From: Macrostomum lignano
Taxonomy: Eukaryota
DNA: 64,000 nt
Assembly (NCBI GenBank): GCA_002269645.1
Contig: NIVC01002421.1
Location: 1-64,000 of the forward strand
Direction: 5' to 3'
Part shown: piece after piece, positions 745 to 20,375 of the stretch
Numbering within the stretch: the first letter of the stretch is position 1
Layout: each line of letters starts with the position of its first letter
Program-made: the position numbers and the translations under genes
Notes under the pieces: generated by a model
Told to the model about the DNA's origin: nothing
The model's input: the letters and a program-made list of their open reading frames with translations, nothing else
The model's database searches: none

Positions 745-1329
745 ATGGAATGTATCGTCTGCTGCGAAGAGGACATCGAGCCATTCGTTTACTGTCATAA
801 CGGCCATCAATTTTGCTATCACTGCTGTACGACAGATGCGATCGATAAATTCCCGTTATGTCGAGCGCCAGCCACCCGGTGCCAAGTATGTGCCACGACA
901 CCTCAAATAAAACTATGCCACAATCAACATTGGGTGTGCCGCGAATGTGCAAACAATATCCGGCGTACCAACAGTCCAAATTGCATCACTTGTGCGACAC
1001 CCATCACGACGGAATTCTGGGACCAAACACGAGACGACCTGCCGACGATACAGCTAACTAAAGAAGCTATGGACCACATGACCGCACGGGCGCTAGCACT
1101 GACAATAAAAACATGGCCGATACCGTTCAACCGTCAGAAACACAGAGAGTATTTGTTCGACCTAATGCGCCATTGTGTCATACACCCGGACAACACCACA
1201 ACCGAGGAAATCTACCTTGACTTCCTCTATGCGACAGAATGCACGGAATACGTGGCAATACAACATCTGATATGGCCCATGGCACGCCCCACACAAAAAA
1301 CACGAGAACTGACACGCGACATATTCTAA
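745..1329 (+). CDS. Tandem double RING-finger (C3HC4, CxxGH-type) protein, putative E3 ligase
   Basis: CIVC..CHNGHQFCYHC..FPLC then CQVC..CHNQHWVCREC..CITC; paralogous over full length to 1669-2268; intronless. Confidence 0.75.
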   Translation: MECIVCCEEDIEPFVYCHNGHQFCYHCCTTDAIDKFPLCRAPATRCQVCATTPQIKLCHNQHWVCRECANNIRRTNSPNCITCATPITTEFWDQTRDDLPTIQLTKEAMDHMTARALALTIKTWPIPFNRQKHREYLFDLMRHCVIHPDNTTTEEIYLDFLYATECTEYVAIQHLIWPMARPTQKTRELTRDIF

Positions 1330-1668
1330 CTAACACAACAAATCGGACGCTCACAATTAAAACCTTAGTATACTAGGAACATAGCTCCATAAAATTTAAA
1401 TGCTTACACTTACGTCTTCTTCTAACATACCATCCTACTACCTGCCAACCCCGAACAATATTCGAGACCAACACAGGCCGGCCCAAGAAGAGAATGCGCT
1501 ATTTTTCACCAATTAAAACTTAGTGACTACAAGCCAATTAAAACGCGATACGTATCCATATATATATACACGCGAAATTCACTTACGATTTATGCCTTCA
1601 CACATCTTTCTGTAATTCCTAAGAGTTCCATCTTCCATTGTTTTGCTTTTGCCTCTATTTATATCATC

Positions 1669-2268
1669 ATGTCTGAGTGCCCTATTTGCCTTGATCCGGC
1701 CCACGCCATGGTCTCCACCTGCGCCTGGGGCCATATGGCCTGCCGTACCTGCGCCGCCAGGGAGGAACTCCAACATTGCTCCATATGTCGACGGGACAGA
1801 GTGTGGTGTGTCCTGTGTGGACGGCTACCGCAGGTGAAGTTGTGCTCCGACGGCCATTGGGTCTGCAACAGCTGCTTGCGCAGTCTGGCTTGTCGGGCTA
1901 TCGGCTACTGTGTTCAATTTGGTTGGAATTTTCTTTCGACCACCACTGCCATTACGGCCACGATCCCGTATGAGCCTGCTCTATGGCTCGATGCTGACTC
2001 TATCCCGCGACTGACTACGCCGGAATTGGCGCGCGCCATCAAGTCATGGCCCGTTACGATGGCCCAAGCCAGGGCCCGGGACGATATGCTCAGGATCGGC
2101 CGGGACGTACTACTAGATGCGACAATTACGACCGAGATGGAGGCCTACCTCGCCATCCTGAACCGCACCGAGTCCACTGCATATACTCCACTGCAGATCA
2201 TGTTTGGGCCTCTGGCGGCGTTGATAATACGGCTGAAATCCGTTCTTGACGACATTTTCATTGCCTAA
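1669..2268 (+). CDS. Tandem double RING-finger protein, paralog 2
   Basis: CPIC..CAWGHMACRTC..CSIC then CVLC..CSDGHWVCNSC; shares C-terminal motifs (IKxWP, TTExExYL) with 745-1329. Confidence 0.75.
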   Translation: MSECPICLDPAHAMVSTCAWGHMACRTCAAREELQHCSICRRDRVWCVLCGRLPQVKLCSDGHWVCNSCLRSLACRAIGYCVQFGWNFLSTTTAITATIPYEPALWLDADSIPRLTTPELARAIKSWPVTMAQARARDDMLRIGRDVLLDATITTEMEAYLAILNRTESTAYTPLQIMFGPLAALIIRLKSVLDDIFIA

Positions 2269-3075: not shown

Positions 3076-3390
3076 ATGGCCGCCTACACACCAGAAAAGG
3101 CTTACACCCGGCGACCTGGCCAGGCTTTTGTGGACGGAGACCTCCACCTTCGGAAGTGCGTCAAGAAAGACGCACAAACACAGGTCGCCGAGTACGATAT
3201 CGATGGCGGCCACTCCATGGCTAAACAAACGGCCGCCGACTATAACGACTGGGGGGTGATCCTGGCCCCAAGAAAGACTCCATGAGACGGGGGCCCGTAT
3301 GAGGCCGCCGTCACCATTAGGCCACGGCCCTCACCGCAGGGCTACCGCCTATATCTATGGAAGATAGGCGACCGCCCGGTCAAGGACTAA
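3076..3390 (+). pseudogene. DAQTQ-family cargo protein, copy with one nonsense codon (TGG>TGA at 3283-3285)
   Basis: Reading through the stop gives DGGPYEAAVTIRPRPSPQGYRLYLW, matching the intact copy 17364-17693 (WEGGPYKAPVTIRPWPTPQGYRQYLW). Confidence 0.75.
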
Positions 3391-3537
3391 TATCAATAGT
3401 ACTAAATGGCCTCGGCGCAACATATACAAAACAAACTATACGCTTGAAACTTTTGCTCGAAGAATACCCATCCTCTGACACAACCACTTATCTAGCACAT
3501 CCTCTTCTACCCCTAATGCAACGTTCACTACCTTTTG

Positions 3538-3670
3538 CAGATTTCTAACCTCTTATATTTGATGAAATACGCACCGGCAACGCGATTTAGTCCCAGCATA
3601 AAGAACCCAAATCCTTGTTCGCACAAGGATTTCGAAAAAAAGGGGGAATTATATTAGAGTTAGAAATCTG
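3538..3670. other. Conserved stem-loop module D (long outer stem plus inner 10-bp hairpin)
   Basis: CAGATTTCTAAC..TATA / TATA..GTTAGAAATCTG outer arms; inner AAATCCTTGT-TCGC-ACAAGGATTT. Confidence 0.7.
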
Positions 3671-4684
3671 AAGTTTTACCTTAAGTTAGTAGATAGATAG
3701 AAATTTATGAAAAGTCCAGGCGCAGCAAAGGGCGAGGCAGAAGAGCACAATGGTACCCATAGATAGCTATTAGAAGGGCAAACAGAAGCAGCAATAAGGC
3801 AATAAATCAAGACAAATAAGAAGGACCGATTCTAATTAAGCCCCTCCCATTCCAGTGAGCAGCAACACCCCGCCGCAGGAACAACGGCACTCAAACCGGC
3901 CGGAGAAGTAAATTAAGTAGCAGCCCGACTTAGGGAACAACGCAGCACGCGGCACGCAGCAGATTTCTGGCGCACCCAGAGGGAGGAAAATGTGCGGCCC
4001 ACCCACGGACTCCAATCCAACCTGAAGAGGCCGAAGAAGGCGAGATCAACCCGAAGTAGTTGACAACCGAGGGAGAGAGAGAGGGCTGTTTAATCATCCA
4101 TGGACAGAGTTAAGAGACGGAAAATTAAGCTCGTTTTATATAACCTTTCTATCCTAGATTTTATCCAACTCAACACATAGATTTGCGAAACCCCGAATAA
4201 TCTCCAACCTTCACACTTAGCAACCTACTAGAACTAACTAAATCCATGTACAACTAGGGGACTGAGTCCCAGATTGTTATTGCTTAAAACTCCCCGCCGT
4301 TGCTAACCTCGCGAGACACATCACCGGCGGCGGGGGGGGCCAAAAATGCTAATTGGTATAAATAGACGCCCATCTCAAACTGGACCGGCGCTTCGTTTTT
4401 CTTGCGCATTTTCGATCTCGAATTGCTCCCTTTGAATTAGTCTCTGGATTATCCAGTTGGCACAAATCTAAGTCTTTAATACAGTTATTTGTCTTAATTG
4501 TCGCGCAGAGCAAATCCTAGAAAGAGTCAAACTCAGCTTAGATACTAGGAGATCCCGTCAGTTTATACGGTTTTCTCCGACGGCCTGATTGAAGAAGTTA
4601 GAGCTATACAAACCTTAGACCGCAAGACATCTATCTTACGAAAGTGAGAACAAAAACTCAAAGGCCCCAGAGACAGCGCGTATA

Positions 4685-4995
4685 CCCTTTGCAGATTTTT
4701 AACTGCTTATATTTGATGAAATAGGAACTGGCACCACGCCTTAGTCACCGCCTAGAGGAACCAAATTCTTGTTAGCACAAGGATTTCAAAAAAGGGGCAA
4801 TCATATGAGTTAGAAATCTGAACTTTTGCCCTAAGTTAGAAGATAGCTATAAATTTATGAAATGCCCAGGCGCATTGAAGGGCGAGGCAGAAAAGAACAA
4901 TGGAACCCCTAGATAGCTATTAGAAGGGCAGACAGAAGCAGCTTTAAGATAAGTGATCAACTGTCAAGTCACTTTAAATATCCGAATCTAATAAA
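4685..4995 (+). mobile_element. Fragment of a further Y unit (stem-loop D 4692-4820 plus downstream block), fused to Gypsy RT by a deletion
   Basis: Homology to 3531-3800 and 9612-9756; breaks at CCGAATCTAATAAA into RT sequence. Confidence 0.65.
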
Positions 4996-7083
4996 AAGAA
5001 GTGGCGAAACACGAGCTACACATCAAGCCCAACATAGAGATAAAGCTTTACAAAAGATATCCCATCCCATACCAATTAATGGGAGAACTACAGAAAACCA
5101 TCGATAGGATGGAAGCCCAAGGGATAATAAAGAAAGCGGCAACTCCATACATCTCGCCAATCTTACTGGTAAAAAAGAAAGCAGAATCGCCCAATGCTAA
5201 CCCTGTTTACCGTCTCTGCGTCGACTTTAGGGACCTCATTATATTCTAGTGCCTGAAAGACAGTCCATGCCCAGAATCCCCGACCTGCTAGCTAAGCTCA
5301 AAGGCTCCATGTACTTCACCACGTTGGATATGGCCCAAGCATTCTTCCAAGTAGCCCTAGAGGAGGAAAGCCAGAAATACTGCGGCATCTAAACCCCGGA
5401 TGGACAAACCTATGTGTTCACTAGAGCACCCATGGGGTTACAATCTTCGCCTGCGGCGCTATCAAGGGCAGTCAGCATAATCTTACAGGGCATACATTGA
5501 GTCTCCACCTACGTGGACGACCTATTAGTGTTTAATGAGACCTTTGAAGACCACCTCAACACGATAAAAACACGCTATCAGCACTCACTAAGCACGGAAT
5601 GAAACTCAGTTGCTGAAATGCAAATTTGCCAAACCGACACAATCAAGCATCCAATACCATGCCTCCAGGCACTGAAGGACGCACAGAAGGAGGATCCATT
5701 CTGCCAGTACATCAGAGCTATGTGGAACGAGCAACCTGGCGGAGAAGATTTGGACTCAAAATAGAAGCGCCATATTGAACGGCACCTAACAGATCATGCT
5801 GAAATTCTGGGCATTATCCACAGAACGGCAGAAAAAACGCAGCAGATAGTACTGCCATTTAAATATCGCGACACAATTTGCTACTCACTGCACGCCCTAC
5901 CCTTGGCCGCACATCTAGATGTCAAGAAGACCTTGGAGAGGATCCGGCGACATTACTTCTGGATCTCCATGGTCCGAGATATACAAGCATTCTGCGACAA
6001 CTGTATGGACTGTGCCAAAAGCAAGTCCGGCAGGATGCATCAAGGCCTCATTCAGATGTCGGAGATACCACTAAAACCGATGGACAAACTGTCAGTGGAT
6101 CTGGTCGGCCCTATGACACCGGCGAGGATAAGGAACGAGTCGGTAACACATTTTTAACCGTTTCGTGCTGCTTCTCCAAGTTTGCCTTAGCGTTCCCAAT
6201 ACCGGACTTGAAAGCCGAAACCACGGCCGAAACACTCTTCCAAGTGTTCTGTACCTTCGGGATACCCGTAGAACTCTCAACGGATAACATCACCAATTTC
6301 ACGGCGACACTACTCACAGATGCCCTAAATATTCTAGGGATACAGCACATTCTAACGTCACCTTACAACCCTCGAGCAAACCATGTGGAACGCCTTCACT
6401 CCACTCTCCACAATATGCTACGACATTACACGGCGGAGAACCCTCACAATTGGCACCAATACCTACAAGCTATAATCCACGCTTAAAACACAGCCAAACA
6501 AGCGTCCTCTAAATACTCACCATTCGAGATAGTGTTCGCCCGGAAGCCACTAATGCCCACAGAATTAACAACACAACTGCAATTCGTACGATACGCAGAC
6601 GAACCCGCATACGCGGAACGAATGCAAGAGGCTATAACCCTAGCCAGAGAAATAGCCCGTCACCACCTACAAGAAGCTCAAAAGAAAAACACAACAAGGG
6701 CAAACAACAGAAGAGTTCCGACCACGATAACAGTAGGAAGCAGGATAATGCTCCAAAATCCAATGAGACAAGCAAAACATCAATCTAAATTTTCTGGACC
6801 ATACGAGGTGGTTAAATGTAACAGTGCCACTTCGGTGCTGATAAAAAAGACAGATGAACCACCGCAAACAGCCTTCCAGGTACATGTGGACAGGCTGAAA
6901 CCGGTGGCCTCACCAGAAGCGCAAGTCTTCCTCCCCGACCTCCGGCCGTGTGATCCCAACCGCCTGCAAAGACAGCAGAAACAGAAGTTCTCGATGGATG
7001 TCGGCATCCAAGTAGAAGATGGAGCGCCGGCGGACACGGCCAGGAAGAAATACAACCTAAGGAGCAAGACCCACCTTCCGTGA
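4996..7083 (+). pseudogene. Decayed Ty3/Gypsy pol: RT (RNase H deleted) plus integrase
   Basis: SPILLVKKK..YRLCVDFRDL, TLDMAQAFFQV, YVDD (~5510), HHCC zinc finger, DLVGP / STDN / VERLH DDE core, GPY motif, VHVDRLKP, C-terminal YNLR; several stops and frameshifts. Confidence 0.93.
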
Positions 7084-7259
7084 CAATTGATGTCATGGGA
7101 AGGGGGGGGGAGAGTACAAAGACCAAAAACATTCATTTTATACTCGTATATGTACTCAGTTGGTATGCGCTGCACTTAACAGTAGAAACACTCACTATTA
7201 ATTACCAATACATACCTGATTAAAATAATTAAAGCACTGACTTATATCACACACAACAG

Positions 7260-7398
7260 ATGTACGACGCTCAGCTTGACTATTTGGACGATGTCTATAT
7301 CGGCGAGGAGACTTCCCCGAATGGAGACGATCGTCAGACCGCTGTTTCAAGACCCGGAGATTCAAGATGAATGGTCGTCAAAGCAGTGTCATCAGTAG
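7260..7398 (+). pseudogene. Internally deleted remnant of the X cargo ORF P (HNH-like)
   Basis: MYDAQLDYLDDVYIGEETSP start and SSKQCH end match the two ends of 13553-14561. Confidence 0.7.
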
Positions 7399-7768
7399 GT
7401 AAGAAAACACCCATAAAACCCAACCAAATAATCCAAATTTAACAATTAAGCGGACAAATTCACGCTTCACCTGACAATTTATTTTTGATTATTCGTACAC
7501 AGTAGTAGTATAACGTAGTAGTGCTATCAAAGATGGACAGAAACACCAGAAAGTAGCACGCATATGGCTTGTAGTATAAAGTAACATTAGTTCGCACGCA
7601 TGATTCTGCGCATAATAAATCATAGCTTAGACCTGTAGCATACGGCAGTTTTAAAAAAGAAAAGTTAAATAGAACAAATACTAAAAATGCTTATATATTT
7701 CCACAAAAAAAATGTTTTCGTCAATCCTTTCGCATAATAGTTACTTAATTCACTGGCAGGTTCCCATA

Positions 7769-8008
7769 TTAAGCAGATAGGGGCCGATAGCGGTACCGGC
7801 AGCAAAACGCCACAATTAAAACGCAGACAACGAGCAGGAGAAATCCGCCTCCGCCTACTCCGCCCAGCACACCTCGGAGCGCTCGGAGCCCAGAATCCGT
7901 CGCTAGAGCTTGATGGGATAGCTCCCTCACGCGCTCCTCCACGGCCAATAAGCGCCGATCCATCCTTGAGAGTAAGCTAGACAATTGCTCCACAGCATGC
8001 TGCGACAT
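7769..8008 (-). CDS. 79-aa coiled-coil + C-terminal transmembrane microprotein (X cargo)
   Basis: ATG at 8008; heptad-like N-terminus, hydrophobic FLLLVVCVLIVAF, then CC-RYRYR; intact paralog at 14952-15191 with mostly synonymous changes. Confidence 0.8.
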   Translation of the reverse strand: MSQHAVEQLSSLLSRMDRRLLAVEERVRELSHQALATDSGLRALRGVLGGVGGGGFLLLVVCVLIVAFCCRYRYRPLSA

Positions 8009-8296
8009 AGTGCCAACGTCAATCCCGTAAAAGCGTAGACAGTATAAGCAGTCAAATTCTATATCCAACACTCGCCAGCGCCGGGGACTCCCTCTCAATT
8101 AAAACTTATATCAGTCCCAGTGGAGGGAACCCCCCTAATAAAAAATCGATCAGTCCGCGGACCCCAAAACCCCCCAGTAGGGGCAAGAGCGGTAAACAAC
8201 CTCAGCGAAGGCCCGTAAAACCCAACCGCGTACATTGTAGCTAAGGATGTACATTGCCAAATAAGAACCAATACAGTTAAAAATCATTCCAGCACA

Positions 8297-8620
8297 ATGG
8301 CTGACCACGGGTGGCGTGCCTATACAGCACTCGATGCTTATCAGAGGCGACCAGGCACCCGTTTTACTGACGTCAACATACATGGGCGGCCCTGTTACAA
8401 GGCAGACGCCCAAACCCAGGCGACTCCGGAAATTATTGATGGGGGACGCTTAGTGGCCGCTGGAACATCGGACCCCGAAGGGGGAGTCATTAGACTCCCC
8501 AGAAGAGAATGGCCTGGGGGCGACTACGTCCCCGCCCCAGACTACGAATGGCCAACGCTCCAGACGCACCGCATGTTCGTCTGGCGCAACCCCAACAAAG
8601 CACCCCCAAATAACAACTGA
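8297..8620 (+). CDS. DAQTQ-family cargo protein (107 aa), unknown function
   Basis: Intact ORF; four paralogs share YxRRPGxxFxDxxxHxxxCxKxDxQTQxxxxxxDGG; synonymous-biased divergence versus 15476-15805. Confidence 0.8.
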   Translation: MADHGWRAYTALDAYQRRPGTRFTDVNIHGRPCYKADAQTQATPEIIDGGRLVAAGTSDPEGGVIRLPRREWPGGDYVPAPDYEWPTLQTHRMFVWRNPNKAPPNNN

Positions 8621-8679
8621 TCGTGCTAACTTAAATTCTAAATAACCTACATTAAATCAAGATATTACGTGACAAATAT

Positions 8680-8797
8680 TAATTTCTAACCCTATATCGT
8701 TCATATTCTTGCGCTATTTCATTTCAGATTCAGGAGATTAATCCTCGTTGCACAAGGATTTCAAAAAAAGGGGGAATAATATAGGGATTAGAAATTA
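8680..8797. other. Stem-loop module D, X-family version
   Basis: TAATTTCTAACCCTATAT / ATATAGGGATTAGAAATTA outer arms; inner AATCCTCGT-TGC-ACAAGGATT. Confidence 0.7.
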
Positions 8798-9300
8798 TGA
8801 AAGTTGGGACAAATAAGAGTTCGCTAAAGGGCAAAGTAAGAAGCAAAAAAAAGCAAGGGGCGAAAGTTCAATTTAAAGATAAGACACCTAAGTGAGAGAA
8901 ATTAAAGAACGGCAAGAAAGTGAAACAAGCTATAGATAAGAAACTAACTCTGACTTTCCCCCAAGATTTCAGACTAAAACCAGATGATATCAAATCGGCC
9001 GAGGTACCAGGCTGAGCCAGTCGGCGCGGTGCCAGGAGAAGCAATACGACACAAAGCCCGACTGGCGGGCGAGATAAAGCAATGGTCAACAGGCCAAGGT
9101 CAGCGGTGACGAACGACCCCAGGGAATAAGAGGACGACTCACCGAGGGACGCACGAGGGGTCTGACGTACGAATCGACTCGAACGATGAACCCTGAACTG
9201 ACCTTTAACCATCGCCTGATGCGACCAATTAACCGATAGCAGATTATCTCTCTCGCCCCGTAGCAACGCGCTAATCTAATGTTGCTGCGTCTGTTTTGGA

Positions 9301-9360
9301 CACCCCGCCGTTGCTAATCAGCGGCGGGGTATGACGTGTATCAAATAATCTATAAAATAG
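9301..9360 (+). promoter_or_regulatory. Putative Pol II core promoter of X: inverted GC boxes, CRE-like TGACGT, TATA
   Basis: ACCCCGCCG-TTGCTAATCAG-CGGCGGGGT-ATGACGTG..TATAAAATAG; repeated at ~16530-16590 and ~16975-17035. Confidence 0.6.
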
Positions 9361-9611
9361 ACACGGCCTTGGCCCCGAAATGGGCAACGGAGAAAAGAGT
9401 CAGAGTTAAGACTGGAAGTCCTGTGCACTTCACAAAACCTTGAGTTTACTTAATCTTCAGCATTTTTGCCGTAGGCGCGAGTAGTAAGCAGCCTCTAGCG
9501 ATCTCTAGTTGTAAGCCCTCTTAGGCTTCAAGGACAGCGAAAGCAATAGAACAAAACCGCTAGACGACCAAGGAGAGAAGCATAACCGAAGCCCGAGAGA
9601 GGAGTCTTACA

Positions 9612-10596
9612 GAAATTTATGAAAAGCCCAGGCGCAGTGAAGGGCGAGGCAGAAGAGTACAATGGAACCCCTAGATAGCTATTAGAAAAGCAAACAGAAG
9701 CAGCTTTACTATAATTAATCAACTGTCAAGTCAATGTGAATAGCCGAATCTAATAAAGCCTCTTTCAATTCCAGTTAGTAGCGTCACCCCGCCGCAGGCA
9801 CAATGGCGACTAAACCGGCCGGGAAAAGCAAACTGAGCAGCGGCCTGACTTAGAGAACAACGCGGCACGCGGCATCTTCTGGCGCACCCTGAGGGAGAAA
9901 ACGTGAGGCCCACCTAGAGACTCCTACCCAACCCGAAGCTGCCCAAGAAGGCGAGATCAACCCCAAGCTGCCTGACAACCGAGAGAAATAGAGGACTGTT
10001 TAATCATTCATGGACAGAGTGTAGAGACGGAAAACTATGCACTTTTTCTATAATCTTTCTATCCCAAATTTTATCCAACTCAACACAGATTTGCGAAAGC
10101 CCGAATAATCTCTAACCTTCACACTTAGCAACCTATTAGAACTAGCTAAATTCATGTACAATTGGGGGACTGAGTCCCAGTTTGTTATTTCTCAAAACCC
10201 CCCGCCGTTGCTAACAACGCGAAGACACCCCACCGGCGGCGGGGGAGGCTAAAAATGCTAATTGGTATAAATAGACGCTCCTCTCAAACTGGAGCGGCGC
10301 TTCGGTTTTCCTGCGCAGTTTTTCGATCTTGAATTGCTCCATTTGAATTAGTTTCTGGATTATCCAGTTGACAGAAATCCGAGTCTCAAATCGATTATTT
10401 GCCTTAACTGTGACATAGAGCAAATCTTAGAGAGACTCCAACTCAGCTTAGATACTAGGAGATCCCGTCAGTTTATACGGTCTCCTCTGACGGCCTGATA
10501 GGAGAGACTAAGAGCTGTAAGAACCTTAGACCGCTAGACATCTATCTTAAGAAAGTGAGAACACGAACTCAAAGGCCCCAGAGAAAGACGCGTATA
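9612..10596 (+). mobile_element. Y-family unit, right part (TATA at 10266), left side interrupted by X1
   Basis: Begins mid-block GAAATTTATGAAAAG (cf. 3702, 4853) and ends CGCGTATA. Confidence 0.65.
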
Positions 10597-10965
10597 CTCG
10601 GGCTTGCTACACTTATTTGCTTGCCTCGATTCTTATTACGCAGCTGTACATCGGATTGAGTTTCTTTGGAGAGGTTAGTAGATGAAAAATGGTCTTTTCT
10701 TTCGTTCTTTGTGAATTTCAATGTGGGTAGAATAGTTCCATATTCTACAGATGGTTCGGTACCTTACCCATTGATTCGTATTCGTAATGAAAAAAACGGC
10801 TCTTGTTCTTGTCTTGCCTTATCTTGTCTTGCTACAGGCACTTGTTCCCCAGTGTCTAGAAGCGGGAATTTGAGAGTGATTGATCACCAGTCTTAATCTC
10901 TTCAGTAGTTGTTATTAACTGTGACCGTATAAATAGTGACCCTGTTATATTTCAACATAACATTT

Positions 10966-11529
10966 GTCTACGAGTTTTTCTATTCAAGGATTCAATTCCA
11001 TCGGTCGCTTGCTTCTGCCCGCGTGCTTGGTGGAGATACGGATAGTTTGATCCTGGCATTGGTTATGGCCAACCCGGAGACGAGTCCTCAGGAGACATTG
11101 TTTAAAGACTTGGTGGAGTGCGGTTTGTTAGATACTAGTAATTATCCACCTTCTCATCCACTTTATACAACAAAGTATAAAGGGAAGTTAATGGCCTGGA
11201 AAGATGAAGTTTGCGGTTGTACGCCGTTGGAGTTTGCATTTCTACGCCCGAAAAACTATTCAATGGTGTATGCAAAGGAAAGCCTCTGTCAGATTGTGCG
11301 TTGCAAGGGCGTGTCGAAGTCAATTGTAAGAGGTATGAAGCACAATGTATTTTTGGGTGCGTTGAAGGATCGAGTTTTGGGGCATGTAACGATGCGGACG
11401 ATTACTTCGCGACGACAGAAGATTTATATTCTTGAGCAGCGCAAGCAGGCGCTTAGCTTTTTCGACACGAAGCGAGCCTGGCTCGATCCCTACTCATCCC
11501 TCCCATTTGGTCATTGGCGGTTGACTTGA
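10966..11529 (+). pseudogene. C-terminal fragment of Maverick/Polinton (adintovirus-like) protein-primed DNA polymerase B
   Basis: YEFFY, GDTDSL (motif C), DTSNYPPSHPLY, KDE, EFAFLRPKNYS, KGV, LSFFDTKR, LPFGH; homology appears to stop upstream of ~10966. Confidence 0.85.
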
Positions 11530-11798
11530 CTTGTTCTCTCTGTCTCTATTTTCTGTCTGTTTATGCTTTTTCTGCTCACAATATATGCGCGCAATTATCG
11601 AATGTATATACAAGAATCTGCCTTTCTTTCTTTCTCTTCGTATTTTTTCGTTTTTCTAGGCCAATGATAGCAGTGCAGGGGATTAGTACTAGGCTTAGTT
11701 TTTTTGATTGGGACGAGGATTACGAGGGTAGTACCAGACTTATTTTAGAGGACGACGATCCTGCTAAGCATAAGATGAACTATGATCCCGCAGCCACG

Positions 11799-12281
11799 AT
11801 GAGCTCCGACGCTTGAACGACGGTCCCGCTGCGCATAGTGCTCACGGATGCCGGGGCAGTAATGCCTCGGCGAGCTACGGCCGGGTCGGTGGGCTATGAC
11901 CTAGCCACGTGCGAAGACCGCACTGTGGAGGCCTTTGACACAGCCATCATTTGCACCGGCCTCCGGGTGATGCTGCCGCTAGGCACCTATAGTCAGATAG
12001 CGAGCCGGTCCAGTTGGGCCAACCCAGGCCTCAATGTGCAGGGTGGCGTGGTTGACCCGGACTATACCGGGGAACTCCGCGTGATCCTGCACAACACGTC
12101 AGATGAGAAAGTTCATCTACTGTGTGCCACCAGCGTGGTTCAACTGATTCTGGAGCGCTGCGTCAGGCCCCCGGTAGAAGTCGGCCGAGCTCGCAAGGGC
12201 CAGCTGCCGGGGGTTTGGCACCGACAACCGGAGCCGGTGGCGGTTCGCGAGACGGGCGGCATGGGCAGCACTAACATCTGA
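11799..12281 (+). pseudogene. dut: Trimeric dUTPase with an in-frame TGA at 11814-11816
   Basis: All five motifs recognisable (VGYDL, SRSS, GVVDPDYTGEL, QLI, RETGGMGSTN); ATG 11799 is in frame with the downstream ORF. Confidence 0.9.
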
Positions 12282-12381
12282 TGCTGCTCGCGCCCGGAGC
12301 CCGTCGGTCGGTGGTGGGAATTGGTGGTGGTTTTTAATACAATATACTGCTCGTGGATTTAACCGCTGTGTGTATAAGCAA

Positions 12382-12725
12382 ATGCAGTTGGTTCTTTTAG
12401 TACAATTAAGTGGGGTGGGAACACAAGGCCAACAGAAGAAGAAGCGAGTGCGTTTACCATCTTTCAGGGGAGCTTCATTTGCCGGGGGTTACCAATTCTG
12501 CGGCCCGGGACACGATTGAGAGAACGTTTGGCGAGGGGCGATACTGGGAAGAATCGGCTCGATAAATTGTGTCTCTTACATGACCTGGCATACGAGAAGC
12601 ACTCGGACGTGGCAGAGCGTAAAAGGCCGATCAACAACTCGAAGCAAGAGCTCGAGAGATTGCTACGGATCCTACAACTAAGTGGGGGGGACGTTTGGCC
12701 GCGAAACTGGTGTCCCGTGTTTTCT
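12382..12725 (+). pseudogene. Parvovirus-type phospholipase A2 domain protein (Maverick/adintovirus PLA2-like), two frameshifts
   Basis: GYQFCGPG / TRLRERLARGDTGKNRLDKLCLLHDLAYEK / ADQQLEARAREIATD across three frames; shifts fall in short homopolymer runs. Confidence 0.8.
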
Positions 12726-13552
12726 AGCATTTTTCTAGCGAGCATGATTAGTGGTGGTGGCGCTGAGAATCTGTTTAAGCGCTGTTATAATCGTTTGCGT
12801 TCTTTCGCGATGAATTATCTGCGTATTAGATTGCGGTAATTTGCTTACTCGTTTTTAATGCGTATGGACTTGCGGCGAATTCAGTCAAATATACTTTGCA
12901 GAGATAAATGGCCAAGGCTAAGGAAGAATTGGACTTTGCATTCAATATTTCTTTTAGGAGAGAGCTAGTGTTGGTTAGTGTGTCGTATAAGATAACTACA
13001 CTATACATACACTATACTTACATCTATAACTACATTTATAACTATTTCATTTCAGACCCAGGAGAATAATCCTCGTTGCACAAGGATTTCAAAAAGGGAA
13101 TAATATAGGGATTAGAAATTAGGACAAGCCTGAACAAAATAAAAGGTTCGCTAAAGGGCAAAGTAAGAAGCTAAAACCAGTGGGCGAAAGTTCAATTTAG
13201 AGATAAGACACTTAAGTGAGAAATTAGAAGAACGGCAAGAAAGCAAAAAAAATCATAGATATGATATGAACTTAATTGTCACTTTCCCCCAAAATTTCAG
13301 ACCAAACGAGATTTCAAAATCGGCCGAGGTACCAGGCAGAGTCAGTCGGCGCAGTGCCAGGAGAATCGAGACGACATGTCACAGAAAGCGGGGGGAGAGT
13401 AGAAAGACTAAAAAACATTCATTTTCATATATATGTACTCAGTTGGTATGCGCTGCACTTTACAATATAAAATATTTACTGTTAAGTACGGCTCGTATCT
13501 ATACATACCCGATTAAAATAACTTAAGCACAGACTCATATCACACACAACAG

Positions 13553-14561
13553 ATGTACGACGCTCAGCTCGACCACTTGGATGATGTCTATATCGGCGAG
13601 GAGACTTCCCCCCGAATGGAGACGATCGTCAGACCGCTGTTTTAAGAACCGGAGATTCAAGATGAATGGTCCAAAAATAGTCGTTTGCAACAAAAATATC
13701 AGCGGTTGCGGCGCGAATGGAAATCAAGAGGGCCACACATCCCCTACGAGATGGGTGACAACACGAAGTGGATGGCTCGATCCGATGACACAACGTACGT
13801 GATACGATTTCACCAAGCTAGTACAACAGACAGTAATCTCCAGCCGGCCAGGTCGGTACAATGATGTAAAATTGTTTGACATCCACCAGGAAATGCTAGA
13901 AATTCCGAGAACGACCAATATGGTGACACATCTGACATGCCAGCGTATCTGCAACAACCCGAGGGACCTCCGATGGTTAAGCGCCGATTAAAACATACTA
14001 GAGCGAAACGCGACTCTCATTTTTGATTACACAAACCAAGATGCCTTCACAGGTCACCATTTCATAGTAATGACAAGGTGGCTCCGCTCACTCATAACGC
14101 ACCCCTGGGGACCTGCAGAAAACCACATGGAACGCCACGTCACTCTGAGAACCTACTTGATAAGCACGCTGCACTATCACGGGATCCATATTTCCCGACA
14201 AGAAATAAGAAAACCGGTAACGCTAGCTTACTCACCGGCCACGTTCCAGTGGCCACAACTGAAAACAGCACTGCTAGCCACCGCACACCCAACCCGGAAA
14301 CAGACGGGTAGTAGAGGCGAAGTTCCCGTAAGGACCGAAAGGGGAGGGTACAGATGGTGAGATTTGACACGATGGTCGAGCGGTTACTCGTGTTCGTGGA
14401 CCAATCGTATTGTCGTACTATCGCACCAAAGTGCTCCCCACAACCCAACACCGGACGAGCTAGCCCTGTGTTTAGGGTTGGTTCAAAAGGTGAAGGGAAA
14501 AATAGGTCTAACGCACAATAGAGAAATTAACAGGTATGATTCGTCAAAGCAGTGTCATTAG
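13553..14561 (+). pseudogene. Decayed ~335-codon cargo ORF P with HNH/His-Me-finger-like motif
   Basis: One frameshift and three stops; HQEMLEIP..VTHLTCQRICNNPRDLRWLSAD*N resembles HxxCxxxxCxNPxHLx7N; the first stop is CAA in the 7260 copy. Confidence 0.5.
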
Positions 14562-14951
14562 TAGGTAAGAAAACACCCATAAAATCCAACAAGAATAATT
14601 TCATACTTAACATTAGCGGACAAACCCATGCTTCAACTAACGATTTATTTATGCTTACAAACGTAGTACGCGTAGCAGCGCCAAAAAAACATCGATTAGA
14701 AATAAAATAAAATGCGTCATACACATAGCCTATAGTAGGTAGCAATACCGTCGTTGAATGATTACGCATGCCCACGCGCTCTTGTGCATAATAATTCTTA
14801 GCTGCAGACCCTTAACATGCTAAAGTATTTTACGGTTACATAAAACAATACAAAACTACCTATATACCGTTATACTAAAACAAAGCAGTTTGTGTCAATC
14901 ATTTTCGCAGAATACAGCAGTCACCTAATAACTTCCCAACGGGTGCCATCG

Positions 14952-15191
14952 TTAAGCCGATAGGGGACGATAGCGATACTTGCAGCAGAACACCGCAATT
15001 AGAACACATAAGATGAGCAGGAGAAATCCACCGCCGCTAACGCCGCCCAGCACGCCTCGCAGCGCCCGTAGCCCAGAGTCAGTAGCCAGAGCCTGATGGG
15101 ATAGCCCTTCCACGCGCTTCTCCAAGACCGATAGTCGCCGTTCCATCTCCGAAAGTAATTTAGACAGTTGTTCAATAGCATGCTGCGACAT
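14952..15191 (-). CDS. 79-aa coiled-coil + TM microprotein, copy 2
   Basis: Intact, same length as 7769-8008. Confidence 0.8.
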   Translation of the reverse strand: MSQHAIEQLSKLLSEMERRLSVLEKRVEGLSHQALATDSGLRALRGVLGGVSGGGFLLLILCVLIAVFCCKYRYRPLSA

Positions 15192-15475
15192 AGTGCCAAG
15201 CCAAAAAAGTTGCAGACAGAATGGAACGAGCTAATCCAAGATAGTTGACTCTCGCCAGCGCCGGGGATACTTTCACAGTAGAACTTATACTAGGCCTAGA
15301 GACGGCCACCTTAATAAAATCGATCGCCCCGCGGACCCCAAACCCCCCCCCCAGTAGGGGTAAGAGCGGTAAATAACCTCAGCGAAGGCCCATAAACCCA
15401 CCCGCGTACATTGAGCTAGCTAAGGATGTACACTGCCAAATAAGAACTAACACAGACAAAAATCATTCCAGCGCA

Positions 15476-15805
15476 ATGGCTGACCGCGAGTGGCGTCCCT
15501 ATACAGCACTCGATGCCTATCAGAGGCGACCGGGCACCCGTTTTAGGGACGTTAATATACATGGGCAGCCCTGCATAAAAGCAGATGAGCAAACGCAAGT
15601 TACACCGGACGACCTCGATGGCGGACGGTCTGTGGCCTCCGGAACCTCGGACCCTGAAGGAGGAGTCATCCGACTCCCCAGAAGGGAATGGCCAGGGGGC
15701 GACTACGTTTCCACCCCTGACAACTCATGGCCAACACTTCAAACTCACCGCCTGTTTGTCTGGCGTAAACCCAACTGGGCGCCCCCGGATGAGGAAAATG
15801 ACTAA
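15476..15805 (+). CDS. DAQTQ-family cargo protein (109 aa)
   Basis: Intact paralog of 8297-8620. Confidence 0.8.
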   Translation: MADREWRPYTALDAYQRRPGTRFRDVNIHGQPCIKADEQTQVTPDDLDGGRSVASGTSDPEGGVIRLPRREWPGGDYVSTPDNSWPTLQTHRLFVWRKPNWAPPDEEND

Positions 15806-15907
15806 ATGCGAGGCTGCAACTGCTAATTAACTAATTGACACAATTCACATCTCACTATCAATTATTACGTTTAATAATTAATTAATCATTTAATTAATGG
15901 CTGCACT

Positions 15908-16023
15908 TAATTTCTAACCATATATCGTTAAAATTCTTACGCCATTTCATTCCAGATTCAGGAGATTAATCCTCGTTGCACAAGGATTTCAAAAAAAGGG
16001 GGAATAATATAGGGATTAGAAAT
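15908..16023. other. Stem-loop module D, X-family version
   Basis: Homologous to 8680-8797. Confidence 0.65.
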
Positions 16024-17363
16024 CAGAATAATCGGGACAAAATAAAGGTTCACTAAAGGACAAAATAAGAAGCTAAAAGCAGGGGGGCGAAAGTTCAATT
16101 TAAAGATAAGACACCTAAGTGAGATAAATTAAAGAACGTCAAGAAAGCGAAATAAATCATAGATATGATAAGAATTTAATTGTAACTTTCCCCCAAGATT
16201 TTAGACCAAACCCGATGACATCAAGTCGGCCGAGGTACCAGGCAGAGCCAGTCGGCGCGGTGCCAGGAGAATCGATACGACATGATACCCCGACTGGCGG
16301 GCGAGATAGAGCAATGGTCAACAGGCCAAGTCAGCGGTGGCGTACGGCCAGGGAGCAAGAGGACGATTCACCGAGGGACGCACGAGGGGTCTGACGTGCG
16401 AATCGACTCGAATAATGAACTCTGAACTGACCTTTAACCATCGCCTGATGTGACAAACTAATAGATATCAAATTATCTCTCTCGCCCCGTAGCAACGCGC
16501 CAATCTAATGTTGCTGCGTCTGTTTTGGCACCCCGCCGTTGCTAATCAGCGGCGGGTATGACGTGTACCTAAAATTCTATAAAATAGACACGGCCTCGGC
16601 CCCGAAATGGGCACTCCGGGAAGATTTAAGCTTCAGAACTGGAAGTCTTGTGCACTTCGCCAATAAATCTAAAAGGACTCATATTTGTTCTTTGTGCTAA
16701 AGGCACGAGTCATAGTCAGCCAAGTAGCGATCTCCTTTGTAAGCTCTCTTAGGCTTCGAGGACAGTGGAAGCAATAGAACAAAACCACTAGACGACCAAG
16801 AAGGAGAGAAGCATAGCCGAAGACCTAAGAGAAGTCTTACACGACATGATACCCCGACTGGCGGGCGAGATAGAGCAATTGTCAACAGGCCAGGGTCAGC
16901 GGTGACAGCTATCAAATTATCTCTCTCGCCTCGTAGCAACGCACTAATCTAATGTTGCTGCATCTGCTTTGGCACCCCGCTGTTGCTAATCAGCGGCGGG
17001 GGATGACGTGTACCTAAAATTCTATAAAAATAGACACGGCCTCGGCCCCGAAATGAGCAACCTGAGAAGAATCCAAGGGACAGCAAGAGTTCCAGTGCAA
17101 TTCACGGAAATCCCAAGATTACTGTTCGTTATTTGTGCTACAGGCACGAGTCTTGGCCAACAAATTGCGATCTCTGTTGTAAGATCTTTTAGGCTCAAGA
17201 TCGAGTGAAAAGCTATATTGATCAAGAACAGGAATTAAAAGGTCAGACTTAGTCAAAAATAGTTAGAGCCTAAGAGAATTCTTACACTACTAAGGGATAT
17301 TTTGGGCAGAGAAAAACACGAGCCAGGTCGCCGAGCTTACGAGCTTAATTTTAGCGCATACAC

Positions 17364-17693
17364 ATGGCCGCTTACACCAGCGATAAAGTCTACGCCCGGC
17401 GACCTGGCCAAGCTTTTGTGGACGTGGATATCCATGTCTACAGGTGCGTCAAAAAAGACGCACAAACGCAGGTCACCGAGTGTGACATAGATGGTGGCCA
17501 TTCAGTGTCCACCCAAACCGCCGAGTCGGACAACGATTGGGGACCCGTGTTGCCTCTCACGAAGATCCCATGGGAGGGAGGCCCCTACAAGGCCCCCGTG
17601 ACCATCCGGCCGTGGCCCACGCCGCAGGGCTACCGCCAATATTTATGGGCCAAAGGTGCCCGCCCAGAGACCGAGGAAGGCGGCGATAATTAA
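17364..17693 (+). CDS. DAQTQ-family cargo protein (109 aa), Y type
   Basis: Intact ORF, paralog of 3076-3390. Confidence 0.8.
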   Translation: MAAYTSDKVYARRPGQAFVDVDIHVYRCVKKDAQTQVTECDIDGGHSVSTQTAESDNDWGPVLPLTKIPWEGGPYKAPVTIRPWPTPQGYRQYLWAKGARPETEEGGDN

Positions 17694-17814: not shown

Positions 17815-17944
17815 CAGATTTCTAAGTCTTATATTTGATGACATACGCAACCGCAATGCGATTTTAGTCCAAGCATAGAGGACCCAAATCCTTGTTAGCA
17901 CAAGGATTTGAAAAAGGGGCAATCGTATAAGAGTTAGAAATCTG
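17815..17944. other. Stem-loop module D, Y-family version
   Basis: 18/19 complementary outer arms (17815-17833 / 17926-17944); perfect 10-bp inner stem 17886-17909. Confidence 0.75.
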
Positions 17945-20375
17945 AAGTTTATCTTAAGTTAGAAGAAGATAGTTAAGTCCCTTTCCATTCCAGTCAGTAG
18001 GGACAACCCGCCGCAGGAACAATGGCGATTAAACTGGCTGGGAGAAGCGGCCCAGCTTAAAGAACAACGCGGCACGCGGCATCTTCTGGCGCACCCTGAG
18101 GGAGAAAACGTGAGGCCCACCTACAGACTCCTATCCAACCTGAAGTGGCCCAAGAAGGCGAGATCAACCCCAAGCTGCCTGACAACCGAGAGAAACAGAG
18201 GACTGTTTAATCTTCAATGGACGGAGTTAAGAGACGGAAAATTAAGCTCTTTTCCTGTTATTTGTCTATCCCAAATTTTGTCCAATGCAACACATAGATT
18301 TCCAAAAAACCCGAATAATCTCTAACCTTCACACTTAGCAACCTACTAGAACTAACTCGATTCATGTACAACTAGGGGACTGAGTCCCAGATTTTTATTG
18401 CTTAAAACCCCCCGCCGTTGCTAACCACGCACGCGAAGACACCTCACCGGCGGCGGGAGACGCAAAAATGCTAATTGGTATAAAATAGACGCCCATCTCA
18501 AACTGGAGCGGCGCTTCGTTTTTCCTGCGCAGTTTCCGATCTTAAATTGCTCCATTTGAATTGGTCTCTGGACTGTTCCAGTTGGCACAAACCAAAGCCT
18601 TAAATCAATCATTTGTCTTAATTGTTGCGCAGAGCAAATACCAGAGAGAGTTACCCTCAGTCTAGATACTAGGAGATCCCGTCAGTTTATACGGTTCTTC
18701 TCTGACGGCTTGATAGGAGAGATTAAGAGCTGCACGAACCTTAGACCGCTAGACACCTATCTTAGAAAGTGAGAACATCAACTCAAAGGCCCCAGAGAAA
18801 AACGCGTATAAAGATTTTTCGGTCCCGAGCGGCGCTACCTCGGATCTTGGAAAAGACCTGTCTTCGAACAGCTGAACTTGTGTTTCACAGTTTCTTTGTG
18901 TTATCAGACGAACACGCGCGCCAACCGCTATCTCCGTTGTAATTTGCGAGTTAAGCTAGAACCGATAAGGAGGGTCTTAAAATGGGGGCAATTATAGAGG
19001 GCTCGGAAATTCACTAGCATAGGAAGTTCTTTCGAGACGCGTTTAAGCTGGACGAAGCAAAGAATTATCAGTATAGGCAGAGGAAAGACAAATAAGACAG
19101 ATAAGATGGTAGAAGGCCGAATGCGGGCAAACAACAGTGACCCATAGCAGCATATGACAAATTCACAGCAGCCCCCAAACCCAAATCTGGCAATCAATCC
19201 CGAAGGGCGTGGGAACCGAAGAGTGGACGCGCGATCCGATGTATGCGGAAATGCAGTGGAAAGACTCAAAAACTGACCTCCACCTCCCCCGCTCGATCGC
19301 TCGAACTCAACCAACGTAACCCGCAAGTTTAGCGTCAAAACCGTAAAAAGTGGTTTGTTTCGGCCCTAAGGCGCTTAACTTGTTTTACTCAGAGCTTGGC
19401 CTCGTAAAAATAACCGTTTTACTATTAAACACTATTCTGTGATTTATACGGTCATCGTATGTAGCAATAACAACTGCCTTTAGTTTAAGGCTAGTAATTT
19501 TTATACTTGGTTAATTCAAAATATATTACTCTACCAGAACAAAACGAATGGTCCTAATGCAAAGTTATTATCCATAAATCTATGAAATTAAAGACATTAA
19601 AATCAATCCACACAAATTGAAATGATGTTTTTTAATTGATAGCGCTAGTTGCTGTCAATGCCGAAGCATCAACGATAACCAGCTGTGCGTTTAAACTCAC
19701 CAAACAGAGCCGTAGAATTTAAAGAATTCCAGCCCGTCTAGCTCGTAAAAGCCATGGCGAGGGAGAGACGACAAGACTGTCGAGCAGCGCGTGTGCTGAT
19801 ATATTATAGAAAGGCCGCTTGTGCATGCACAGGGGTTGCTGGACACCCGGGCATGTGTGGGCAATCCAGATTGGCCGAGAGGGAGAGGGAGACAAGGGGA
19901 GAGAGAGAAGAGAGAGACTCAGTTTTCTGTACAGGCCCAAGGCTTCCGTTCTGGGTTTCAAGACCTTGTCAAGGCCGAAGAGCCTCGTTTCCGCGGCCCC
20001 TCTTCCGAGTGGGGGGGGGCTTGGGGTTGGTGTTGCGTCTGTTGGCTGATGGCTGAGTTCGTAAATGTGCACATGACTCCACCCTACGTTTTTCAATTCG
20101 TCTATTAGGGCAGAAAAGCTAGGACGGGTAAAAGATAGGACGTGCTTGAAATTGGTCTTCTGCTTTTCGTGGCGGACCCTGATAAGTGAAAATTCATACT
20201 TTTTTCGTGTGCTCAAGGTTCTAAGGAATTAGATTCGGCTTCGGGATAAGTCTGCTTCGAGCTAGAATGTTCATTTATCTGTCCAACCAAAACCAAACAA
20301 CATTTTTACTCCTGTATCTGTATCGGATGGCAATAGGATTACAGATGCTCTGCTCTGCCTTCGACTTCGATCATG

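What the first reader, a model, noticed from the sequence alone, without database searches (positions are those of the whole stretch)
3076..17693. Novel ~105-aa protein family (4 copies) under purifying selection, with a possible LC8-binding motif
Seen: copies at 3076, 8297, 15476 and 17364 share YxRRPGxxFxD, HxxxCxKxDxQTQ, DGG and WxGGxY..WP(S/T)xQ. Between 8297 and 15476 the 22 codons GTSDPEGGVIRLPRREWPGGDY differ by 7 synonymous and 0 replacement changes (hand count). It is the one cargo gene common to X and Y. Inference: the conserved D-x-Q-T-Q-(V/A) resembles dynein light chain LC8 anchors (DxxTQT/IQV) used by several viruses for transport. I recognise no domain.
Basis: partly seen in the sequence, partly recalled or inferred. 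Interest (0 to 1): 0.75.

Follow-up and report, generated by a model that had tools for sequence, protein, structure and literature searches.

The report
Orphan accessory gene of flatworm retroelements
A small protein gene with no known relatives sits in four copies (three intact, one broken) at the tail end of retrotransposon-like repeats in the flatworm Macrostomum lignano; selection clearly keeps it as a protein, but the proposed dynein light-chain (LC8) binding is an untested guess.

Summary
The four copies are real. Three are intact (107-109 aa) and one carries 3 in-frame stops. They fall into two subfamilies: alpha (3076, 17364) and beta (8297, 15476).

The window comes from Macrostomum lignano. 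The family has no Pfam, PDB or PHROG match. Among billions of proteins, the only relative found is a partial copy inside one chimeric M. lignano gene model. AlphaFold gives pLDDT 33-37, so there is no usable fold.

Each copy is the last plus-strand ORF before a conserved hairpin plus polypurine tract and an LTR-like repeat. One copy lies downstream of a Ty3-type RT/integrase remnant.

My reading is a lineage-specific additional ORF of LTR retroelements: a hydrophilic, probably disordered protein that likely works through short conserved motifs.

It is not the only shared cargo. A minus-strand tail-anchored membrane ORF is also shared and is equally constrained.

The LC8 idea rests on a 3-residue core. 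One copy has a disfavoured residue after it, and three copies have one before it. It is neither supported nor excluded.

The parts
3076..3402 (+). Copy c1 (alpha subfamily), a pseudogene with 3 in-frame stops and no frameshift
   Evidence: 67% protein identity to c4 over 101 residues
8297..8620 (+). Copy c2 (beta subfamily), intact, 107 aa
15476..15805 (+). Copy c3 (beta subfamily), intact, 109 aa
17364..17693 (+). Copy c4 (alpha subfamily), intact, 109 aa. It is the closest copy to the partial one inside M. lignano UniRef A0A1I8IVR3.
7769..8098 (-). Partner ORF of c2, transcribed divergently. It has a coiled-coil, a Gly-rich linker and one C-terminal membrane helix (tail-anchored type). The part conserved between the two units is 79 aa.
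   Evidence: dN/dS 0.20
14952..15191 (-). Partner ORF of c3, the same family as 7769-8098
3610..3650 (+). Hairpin (9-bp stem) plus polypurine run, 208 nt after the end of c1. Further copies of this module lie at about 4764-4802, 8740-8776 (120 nt after c2), 13068-13100, 15968-16005 (163 nt after c3) and 17887-17925 (194 nt after c4).
   Evidence: alignment A5
1..454 (+). LTR-like direct repeat, copy a, cut by the window start. It is 96.7% identical to copy c.
3673..4685 (+). LTR-like direct repeat, copy b, directly after the c1 hairpin/polypurine module. It contains a palindrome and a TATA box.
9611..10597 (+). LTR-like direct repeat, copy c
17947..18810 (+). LTR-like direct repeat, copy d, directly after the c4 hairpin/polypurine module
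8796..9611 (+). Module S1 between c2 and LTR-like copy c. It carries a second palindrome plus TATA promoter-like site. Homologous blocks lie at 16029-16841, with a partial duplicate at 16841-17199 just upstream of c4.
4995..7083 (+). Ty3/Mdg4-type pol remnant upstream of the membrane ORF and c2. Only an N-terminal RT piece remains and most of RT/RNase H is absent. The integrase (H2C2, core, C-terminal) has one frame change and one in-frame stop.
   Evidence: Pfam Integrase_H2C2 3e-17 and rve 2e-9; PDB Ty3 RT 4ol8 E 0.0012 and PFV integrase 2e-7
745..2268 (+). Two Sina-type RING-finger ORFs (745-1329 and 1669-2268) upstream of c1. In locus L001 a near-identical RING gene lies directly downstream of a Ty3-type integrase.
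10933..12836 (+). Diverged, truncated fragment of a PolB-type DNA element (PolB C-terminal part, dUTPase, remnant of a parvovirus-type PLA2 domain). It is a neighbour of the finding, not part of the c gene module.

Best explanation
The ~108-aa ORF is a lineage-specific additional ORF (aORF/ORF3-type accessory gene) of Ty3/Mdg4-type LTR retroelements of Macrostomum lignano.

Shown:
- It is a real coding sequence kept by purifying selection.
- It exists in two paralogous subfamilies.
- In every copy it is the last plus-strand ORF before a conserved hairpin plus polypurine tract and an LTR-like repeat.
- In one unit it lies downstream of an RT/integrase remnant.
- Beta copies are paired head-to-head with an equally constrained tail-anchored membrane ORF.
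- Alpha copies follow RING-finger genes, which elsewhere in the genome sit directly after an integrase.

Inferred:
- The selection acts in the element lineages, because the copies are embedded in repeats, one copy is decaying, and the neighbouring pol is broken.
- The protein is hydrophilic, rich in Pro, Gly and Trp, and probably largely disordered.
- It works as a small adaptor, binding host or element proteins through its few invariant short motifs. The partner is unknown; LC8 is one candidate among many.
- It is expressed from a subgenomic message, either from the internal palindrome/TATA site upstream of c4 and the divergent promoter upstream of c2/c3, or through the AG acceptor-like site 4-21 nt before each ATG.
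For: Coding and selection: (dN/dS 0.15-0.28, specific to one frame, third-position bias 35 of 56 differences). The Thr of the invariant Q-T-Q uses three different codons among the four copies.

Host identity: the only relative in 1.84 billion representative proteins is a partial copy inside M. lignano A0A1I8IVR3. Window 477-1344 is 97.5% identical to M. lignano contig NIVC01000272.1.

Retroelement context:
- RT and integrase remnants lie upstream of c2 in the same orientation.
- There are four direct LTR-like repeats, 85-97% identical.
- A hairpin/polypurine module lies 120-208 nt after every copy.
- The block 7099-9611 begins 16 nt after the integrase stop and recurs at 13384-16841.
- In L001 the order integrase, RING, RING holds on one strand, matching RING, RING, c1, LTR in the window.

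Absence from the PolB element: the complete PolB-type DNA element in L001 has no c copy, no membrane-ORF copy and no LTR module.

Physical character: mean hydropathy is below the charge-hydropathy boundary in all three intact copies, Pro+Gly is 18-21%, and there is no hydrophobic segment. AlphaFold pLDDT is 33 and 37.

Known kind: additional ORFs between pol and the 3' LTR, in sense or antisense orientation, are described in plants and bdelloid rotifers (PMC7264820 and PMC5408684).
Against: - No gag, protease, primer-binding site or target-site duplication was found in the window.
- The sequence after each of the four LTR-like repeats is different, so none behaves as a 5' LTR of an intact element.
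- The repeat ends are not the usual TG...CA.
- Only four copies plus one outside fragment could be examined, because the M. lignano genome could not be searched as a whole.
- Each gene has its own promoter-like module, which would also fit a cassette array of another kind of element.
- Low pLDDT may only reflect the 4-sequence alignment, so disorder is not shown.
- A weak similarity to a bacterial Ig-like repeat (hhalign probability 34%) could mean a small beta fold instead.
- No expression data were available.
Confidence: 0.6

Rival explanations
1. LC8 hijacker. The invariant segment around Q-T-Q, in a disordered region, docks as a beta-strand into the dynein light chain LC8 dimer. This would give the element's complexes transport or dimerisation, or titrate LC8 away from host complexes.
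For: Asp at -4, Thr at -1 and Gln at 0 are present in all four copies and maintained through synonymous codon changes. Val at +1 is present in three copies. Hydropathy and pLDDT are compatible with disorder. The motif definition comes from PMC3078936 and PMC6607443.
Against: Position +1 is Ala in c2. Position -3 is Ala in three copies, a residue that is depleted among binders. Position +2 is not acidic. Many peptides with a perfect anchor do not bind, and 12 of 19 predicted sequences failed. The core pattern is common by chance. The motif directly follows the invariant His and Cys and may be part of a fold. In the weak alignment to an Ig-like repeat it falls in a strand. No binding evidence of any kind exists.
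Confidence: 0.07
2. Gene cassette of a non-retroviral (DNA virus-like) element. The repeated ~0.8-1 kb modules would be promoter/terminator regions between cassettes of a large endogenous DNA element. That element would also carry the RING genes, PolB and dUTPase, and the RT/integrase pieces would be unrelated insertions.
For: Seven palindrome plus TATA modules precede genes. A hairpin follows each gene. No primer-binding site or gag is present. A PolB/dUTPase/PLA2 fragment lies between two of the repeats.
Against: The one complete PolB element available (L001, 4.4-kb terminal inverted repeats) has none of c, the membrane ORF, the hairpin module or the palindrome module. The polypurine run directly before the repeat and the contiguity of the integrase stop with the shared block point to a retroelement. 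RING genes follow an integrase in L001.
Confidence: 0.15
3. Host gene family (domesticated or native) that merely lies in a repeat-rich region. Selection would then act for the worm, not for an element.
For: ORFs are intact while the neighbouring pol is broken. dN/dS is well below 1.
Against: All copies are embedded in the same repeated modules, four within 15 kb, and one is decaying. No stand-alone annotated protein of this family exists in the searched collections; only a chimeric model was found. Two diverged subfamilies sit side by side with different partner genes.
Confidence: 0.1
4. Small beta-sandwich (Ig-like) domain protein, distantly related to bacterial Y_Y_Y/PKD-type repeats, acting as a folded binding module.
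For: The profile search lists two bacterial repeat proteins at E 3e-6 and 2e-5. c4 against one repeat unit gives 19/54 identities and 33.9 bits. Pfam calls those repeats Y_Y_Y/PKD-like. hhalign gives E 4e-4 and probability 34%.
Against: The library E-values come from adding 5-7 near-identical repeats. A single 34-bit match is far from significant in a library of 2.4e11 residues. The similarity is carried by c4-specific residues that the beta copies lack. AlphaFold gives no confident fold and Foldseek's best E is 3.
Confidence: 0.08

Closest known systems
Additional ORFs (aORF / ORF3) of LTR retrotransposons: plant Grande, RIRE2 and Retand antisense aORFs, and the varied ORF3s of bdelloid rotifer elements (PMC7264820, PMC5408684)
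   Same: Located between pol and the 3' LTR. Both sense and antisense ORFs occur. They are lineage-specific, mostly of unknown function, and include small ORFs with a membrane helix. The same ORF type is shared between different element lineages.
   Different: No sequence similarity to any of them. Here there are two paralogous subfamilies, in one unit both in tandem, combined with RING-finger genes or a tail-anchored membrane ORF. The copies seen lack gag, a primer-binding site and intact pol, so the element type rests on remnants.
Small accessory proteins of complex retroviruses (the class that includes lentiviral Vpr/Vpu/Nef and foamy-virus accessory genes driven by an internal promoter); from general knowledge
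   Same: The size (~80-110 aa), the position in the 3' part of the element, likely expression from a subgenomic message or internal promoter, and action by binding host proteins rather than by catalysis (inferred here).
   Different: No homology was found by sequence or fold search. The host is a flatworm and the carrier is a Ty3/Mdg4-type element. No function has been shown.
   Same: A Thr-Gln core with Asp four residues before it, in a hydrophilic protein.
   Different: The third anchor residue is Val or Ala rather than Thr. Positions -3 and +2 do not fit the published preferences. No named LC8 partner came back from any search with the family's own proteins.
Bacterial Y_Y_Y / PKD-like Ig repeats (protein P0003)
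   Same: About 50 alignable residues, with 19 identities to c4.
   Different: Not significant once the repeat summation is removed. The similarity is not shared by the beta copies.

Membership tests
LTR-retrotransposon additional ORF (aORF/ORF3) | Lies between pol and the 3' LTR of the element | tested here: met
   c2 lies 1.2 kb downstream of the integrase remnant and upstream of the LTR-like repeat. The shared block starts 16 nt after the integrase stop.
LTR-retrotransposon additional ORF (aORF/ORF3) | A polypurine tract and then the LTR follow the last internal ORF | tested here: met
   A hairpin plus polypurine module lies 120-208 nt after every copy. For c1 and c4 it is followed at once by the LTR-like repeat.
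LTR-retrotransposon additional ORF (aORF/ORF3) | The carrier is a bona fide LTR retrotransposon (paired LTRs, primer-binding site, gag-pol, target-site duplication) | tested here: inconclusive
   RT and integrase remnants and four direct repeats are present. No gag, primer-binding site or duplication was found, and each repeat is followed by different sequence.
LTR-retrotransposon additional ORF (aORF/ORF3) | Present in most copies of the element family, not a one-off transduction | not testable with these tools
   Four copies in the window and one fragment elsewhere in M. lignano. The genome could not be scanned as a whole.
LC8-binding linear motif | Anchor [T/V/I]-Q-[T/V] at positions -1, 0 and +1 | tested here: inconclusive
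   T-Q-V in three copies and T-Q-A in c2. Motif from PMC3078936.
LC8-binding linear motif | Favourable flanks: a polar residue or Asp at -4, a large or basic side chain at -3, D/E or a strand breaker at +2 | tested here: not met
   Position -4 is Asp in all copies, which fits. Position -3 is Ala in three copies and Glu in one. Position +2 is Thr or Ala (rules in PMC6607443).
LC8-binding linear motif | The motif lies in an intrinsically disordered segment | tested here: inconclusive
   Hydropathy is below the charge-hydropathy boundary and pLDDT is below 50 throughout. The alignment has only four sequences.
LC8-binding linear motif | Physical binding to LC8 | not testable with these tools
   No tool for complexes or binding was available.
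Retroviral / errantiviral Env | Signal peptide, large ectodomain and membrane anchor | tested here: not met
   107-109 aa with no hydrophobic segment; the maximum 9-residue hydropathy is 1.3. No Pfam match.
Gene of the PolB-type (Polinton/Maverick-like) DNA element | Present in complete copies of that element | tested here: not met
   The complete element in L001 (terminal inverted repeats, PolB, dNK, dUTPase, PLA2) has no c copy at E<=1, apart from a chance-level match in the flanking RING gene.
Any curated protein family (Pfam, PHROGs) or solved structure | A significant profile or sequence match | tested here: not met
   No family at E<=0.1. The best PDB sequence hit has E 0.95. Foldseek's best E is 3.

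The most novel reading that the evidence does not exclude
The protein is a retroelement-encoded LC8 binder. It could couple the element's complexes to dynein or LC8-driven dimerisation. Alternatively it could act as a decoy that withdraws LC8 from host complexes. In Drosophila the transposon-silencing PICTS complex depends on LC8 (PMC7861614, title), so a transposon-encoded LC8 decoy would be a new kind of counter-defence.
Probability: 0.05. Interest if true: 0.75.

Novelty: new member of a known kind. Interest (0 to 1): 0.35.

Why it matters
Accessory genes of LTR retrotransposons are widespread but almost none has a known role. Here a flatworm model organism carries element lineages with a multi-gene accessory region. 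It holds RING-finger genes, a tail-anchored membrane protein and this small protein in two paralogous forms, all still under selection although pol is broken in the copies seen.

If a genome-wide census confirms this, it would document retrovirus-like genetic complexity and module exchange between element lineages in Platyhelminthes. It would also give M. lignano, which has transgenesis and expression resources, a tractable case for studying what such accessory proteins bind.

On present evidence it is an orphan gene of a mobile element, which is a common kind of finding.

Tried and rejected
1. Homology searches found nothing usable.
- Pfam and PHROGs gave no family.
- A PDB sequence profile gave a best E of 0.95.
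- The 5.8-billion-protein search, with the alignment and with c4 alone, gave nothing.
- Scans of prokaryotic genome contigs, viral contigs and metagenome contigs gave nothing.
- Exact look-ups of c3, c4 and the two RING ORFs were not on record.

2. The exhaustive profile search gave three hits. One is a partial copy in a chimeric M. lignano model fused to a P2X receptor. The other two are bacterial repeat proteins. Their significance comes from summing near-identical repeats, so I rejected them as homologues.

3. AlphaFold2 was run twice, with c3 first and with c4 first. pLDDT was 33 and 37, so there is no usable model. Foldseek on the better model gave a best E of 3 and TM-score at most 0.25.

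4. Similarity of c4 to the RING proteins gave 26.6 bits pairwise, but the profile-profile probability was 0.6%. Rejected.

5. The idea that module S1 is a diverged LTR was rejected. Only a 21-nt palindrome is shared with the LTR-like repeat.

6. Rfam found no family anywhere in the window.

7. An N-terminal extension of the ORF was rejected. In-frame stops lie within 33 codons upstream in three of the four copies.

8. I looked for a primer-binding site or TG...CA termini at the repeat ends by eye on alignment A3 and found none.


Full report
**What is there**

ORF listing and tblastn show exactly four related plus-strand reading frames in the window, at 3076, 8297, 15476 and 17364.
- Three are intact: 107, 109 and 109 aa.
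- The one at 3076-3402 has 3 in-frame stops and no frameshift.
- They form two subfamilies. Alpha is 3076 and 17364, at 67% protein identity. Beta is 8297 and 15476, at 80%. Identity between subfamilies is 39-44%.
- Over the 69 residues shared by all four there are 23 invariant columns.

**Is it more than chance, and is it coding?**

Yes to both.
- Nei-Gojobori dN/dS is 0.185 for the beta pair (dS 0.75), 0.178 for the alpha pair, and 0.22-0.28 between subfamilies.
- Fisher p values run from 1e-9 to 3e-5.
- The signal is frame-specific. Only the annotated frame has a low ratio (0.15) and no stops. The other five frames give 0.36-2.4 with 1-6 stops.
- Differences by codon position are 11/10/35.
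- The Thr of the invariant Q-T-Q block is encoded by three different codons among the copies.
- In-frame stops lie shortly upstream of the ATG in three of the four copies, so the ATG is the start.

**Source organism**

The exhaustive profile search of 1.84 billion representative proteins returned one true relative. It is a partial c4-like stretch inside UniRef A0A1I8IVR3 of Macrostomum lignano, a chimeric gene model that runs into a P2X receptor.

A search with the neighbouring PolB fragment found M. lignano protein BOX15_Mlig002880g1. Its locus, L001 (NIVC01000272.1), is 97.5% identical to window 477-1344. The window is therefore M. lignano DNA or a very close relative.

The rest of the window carries ordinary host genes and satellites: three KY-like genes, an AMP-binding enzyme, an ankyrin protein and an MFS transporter.

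**No known family**

Every search came back empty.
- Pfam and PHROGs: nothing.
- PDB sequences: best E 0.95.
- The word-indexed search of 5.8 billion proteins: nothing, twice.
- Viral, metagenome and prokaryotic contigs: nothing.
- Two bacterial Ig-like repeat proteins appear in the profile search, but only because 5-7 near-identical repeats add up. One repeat gives 34 bits and hhalign probability 34%. I do not accept this as homology.
- AlphaFold2 with the four-sequence alignment gave pLDDT 33 and 37, and Foldseek found nothing.

The intact proteins are hydrophilic. Mean hydropathy is below the charge-hydropathy boundary, Pro+Gly is 18-21%, and there is no hydrophobic segment. They are either largely disordered or a small fold that cannot be predicted from so few sequences.

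**Surroundings**

The first 19 kb is a nest of related repeats.
- Four direct LTR-like repeats lie at 1-454, 3673-4685, 9611-10597 and 17947-18810. They are 85-97% identical, and each holds a palindrome and a TATA box.
- Every copy of the family is followed within 120-208 nt by a conserved module: a 9-bp-stem hairpin and a polypurine run. After c1 and c4 the LTR-like repeat follows at once.
- After c2 and c3 comes an ~0.8-kb module, S1, with a second palindrome/TATA site. In the third unit S1 is partly duplicated and followed by c4.
- Upstream of c2, in the same orientation, is a Ty3/Mdg4-type pol remnant. It has an N-terminal RT piece whose best PDB match is Ty3 RT, and an integrase (Pfam Integrase_H2C2 3e-17, rve 2e-9). 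Most of RT/RNase H is missing, and the integrase has one frame change and one stop.
- The block that starts 16 nt after the integrase stop (7099-9611) recurs at 13384-16841. It holds a minus-strand ORF for a coiled-coil, tail-anchored membrane protein, then c2 or c3 transcribed divergently from it.
- That membrane ORF is as constrained as the family itself, with dN/dS 0.20. So the family is not the only shared cargo.
- Alpha copy c1 instead follows two Sina-type RING-finger ORFs. In L001 a 97%-identical RING gene and a second one lie directly downstream of a Ty3-type integrase on the same strand. The RING genes therefore also belong to a post-pol accessory region.

**The PolB and dUTPase 'cargo'**

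Window 10933-12836 is a diverged, truncated piece of a different element. L001 holds a complete one of about 15.8 kb with 4.4-kb terminal inverted repeats that are 99-100% identical. It encodes protein-primed PolB, an endonuclease VII domain, deoxynucleoside kinase, dUTPase, a parvovirus-type PLA2 domain and a Walker-A protein. That element has no c copy, no membrane-ORF copy, no hairpin module and no palindrome module. The family does not belong to it.

**Interpretation**

The position matches the known class of additional ORFs of LTR retrotransposons. That position is the last sense ORF before a polypurine tract and LTR, downstream of pol, with an antisense partner or RING genes. Such ORFs are described between pol and the 3' LTR in sense or antisense orientation, including small membrane ORFs, and are shared between element lineages (PMC7264820 and PMC5408684). 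M. lignano is known to carry many Ty3/Mdg4 families (PMC12801592).

I therefore read the family as a lineage-specific accessory gene of these elements. It is kept by selection in the element lineages and probably acts as a small adaptor through its invariant short motifs. These last steps are inference.

Weak points:
- No gag, primer-binding site or target-site duplication was found.
- Each LTR-like repeat is followed by different sequence.
- Only five copies are known.

A cassette array of another element type and a host gene family remain as rivals.

**LC8**

The published motif is [D/S]-4 K-3 X-2 [T/V/I]-1 Q0 [T/V]+1 [D/E]+2 (PMC3078936).
- The copies fit at -4, -1 and 0.
- They fit at +1 in three of the four copies.
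- They do not fit at -3, which is Ala in three copies and is a depleted residue, or at +2.
- Many perfect anchors do not bind, and the core pattern is frequent by chance.

The idea is not excluded, but nothing supports it beyond the pattern.

**Verdict**

This is a real, selected, orphan protein family. It is most likely an accessory gene of flatworm LTR retroelements, which makes it a new member of a known kind. The specific LC8 mechanism is unsupported.

One observation is only partly explained. Synonymous divergence between c2 and c3 (pS 0.47) exceeds the divergence of the adjacent non-coding modules (16-23%), while a spacer further upstream differs by 35% with many gaps. This suggests the promoter, hairpin and S1 modules are constrained as well.

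Noticed in passing
window 7769-8098 (-) and 14952-15191 (-): A minus-strand ORF encodes a coiled-coil, Gly-rich linker, single C-terminal membrane helix and a Cys-Cys/basic tail. It is transcribed divergently from c2 and c3. The two copies are 79% identical in protein, with dN/dS 0.20.
   Followed up: partly
L001 3312-19160 (M. lignano NIVC01000272.1); fragment at window 10933-12836: A young PolB-type DNA element of ~15.8 kb with 4.4-kb terminal inverted repeats that are 99-100% identical. It encodes protein-primed PolB with an endonuclease VII domain, deoxynucleoside kinase, dUTPase, a parvovirus-type PLA2 domain and a Walker-A protein. No capsid gene was recognised. It is flanked on both sides by Ty3-type integrase genes in the same orientation.
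   Followed up: partly
window 745-1329 and 1669-2268 (+); L001 60-647 and 909-1358 (-): Sina-type RING-finger ORFs, 28% identical to each other. In L001 they lie directly downstream of a Ty3-type integrase, which suggests E3-ligase-like accessory genes in an LTR retroelement lineage.
   Followed up: partly
window 60, 4293, 9304, 10201, 16532, 16976, 18411: Seven copies of a promoter-like module: a GC-rich palindrome around a 14-nt core, followed by a TATA box about 40-60 nt downstream. Four copies are in the LTR-like repeats and three are in module S1. About 0.4 copies are expected by chance.
   Followed up: partly
window 4683-4995: Directly after LTR-like copy b, the sequence that normally precedes and begins the repeat recurs (pre-hairpin region, hairpin/polypurine module, first ~185 nt of the repeat). 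It then abuts the RT remnant. This is a rearrangement junction and was not resolved.
   Followed up: no
window 13671-14541: About 870 nt are present in the third unit but absent from the homologous block of the second unit. The content was not identified.
   Followed up: no
window 26104-36040 (-): Three tandem paralogous host genes with KY-like Ig domains (Pfam Ig-like_KY, E 1e-24 to 1e-40).
   Followed up: partly
window 20370-21294, 22162-22813, 52625-54548, 58109-60251, 61904-62511: Several long satellite arrays with periods of 20, 21/42, 40, 32 and 12/24 nt. They create long spurious ORFs.
   Followed up: no
window 8005-9520 vs 15188-16750: The non-coding modules around c2 and c3 are more alike (77-84%) than the synonymous sites of the genes (pS 0.47). 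This suggests constraint on the intergenic promoter, the hairpin and module S1.
   Followed up: partly
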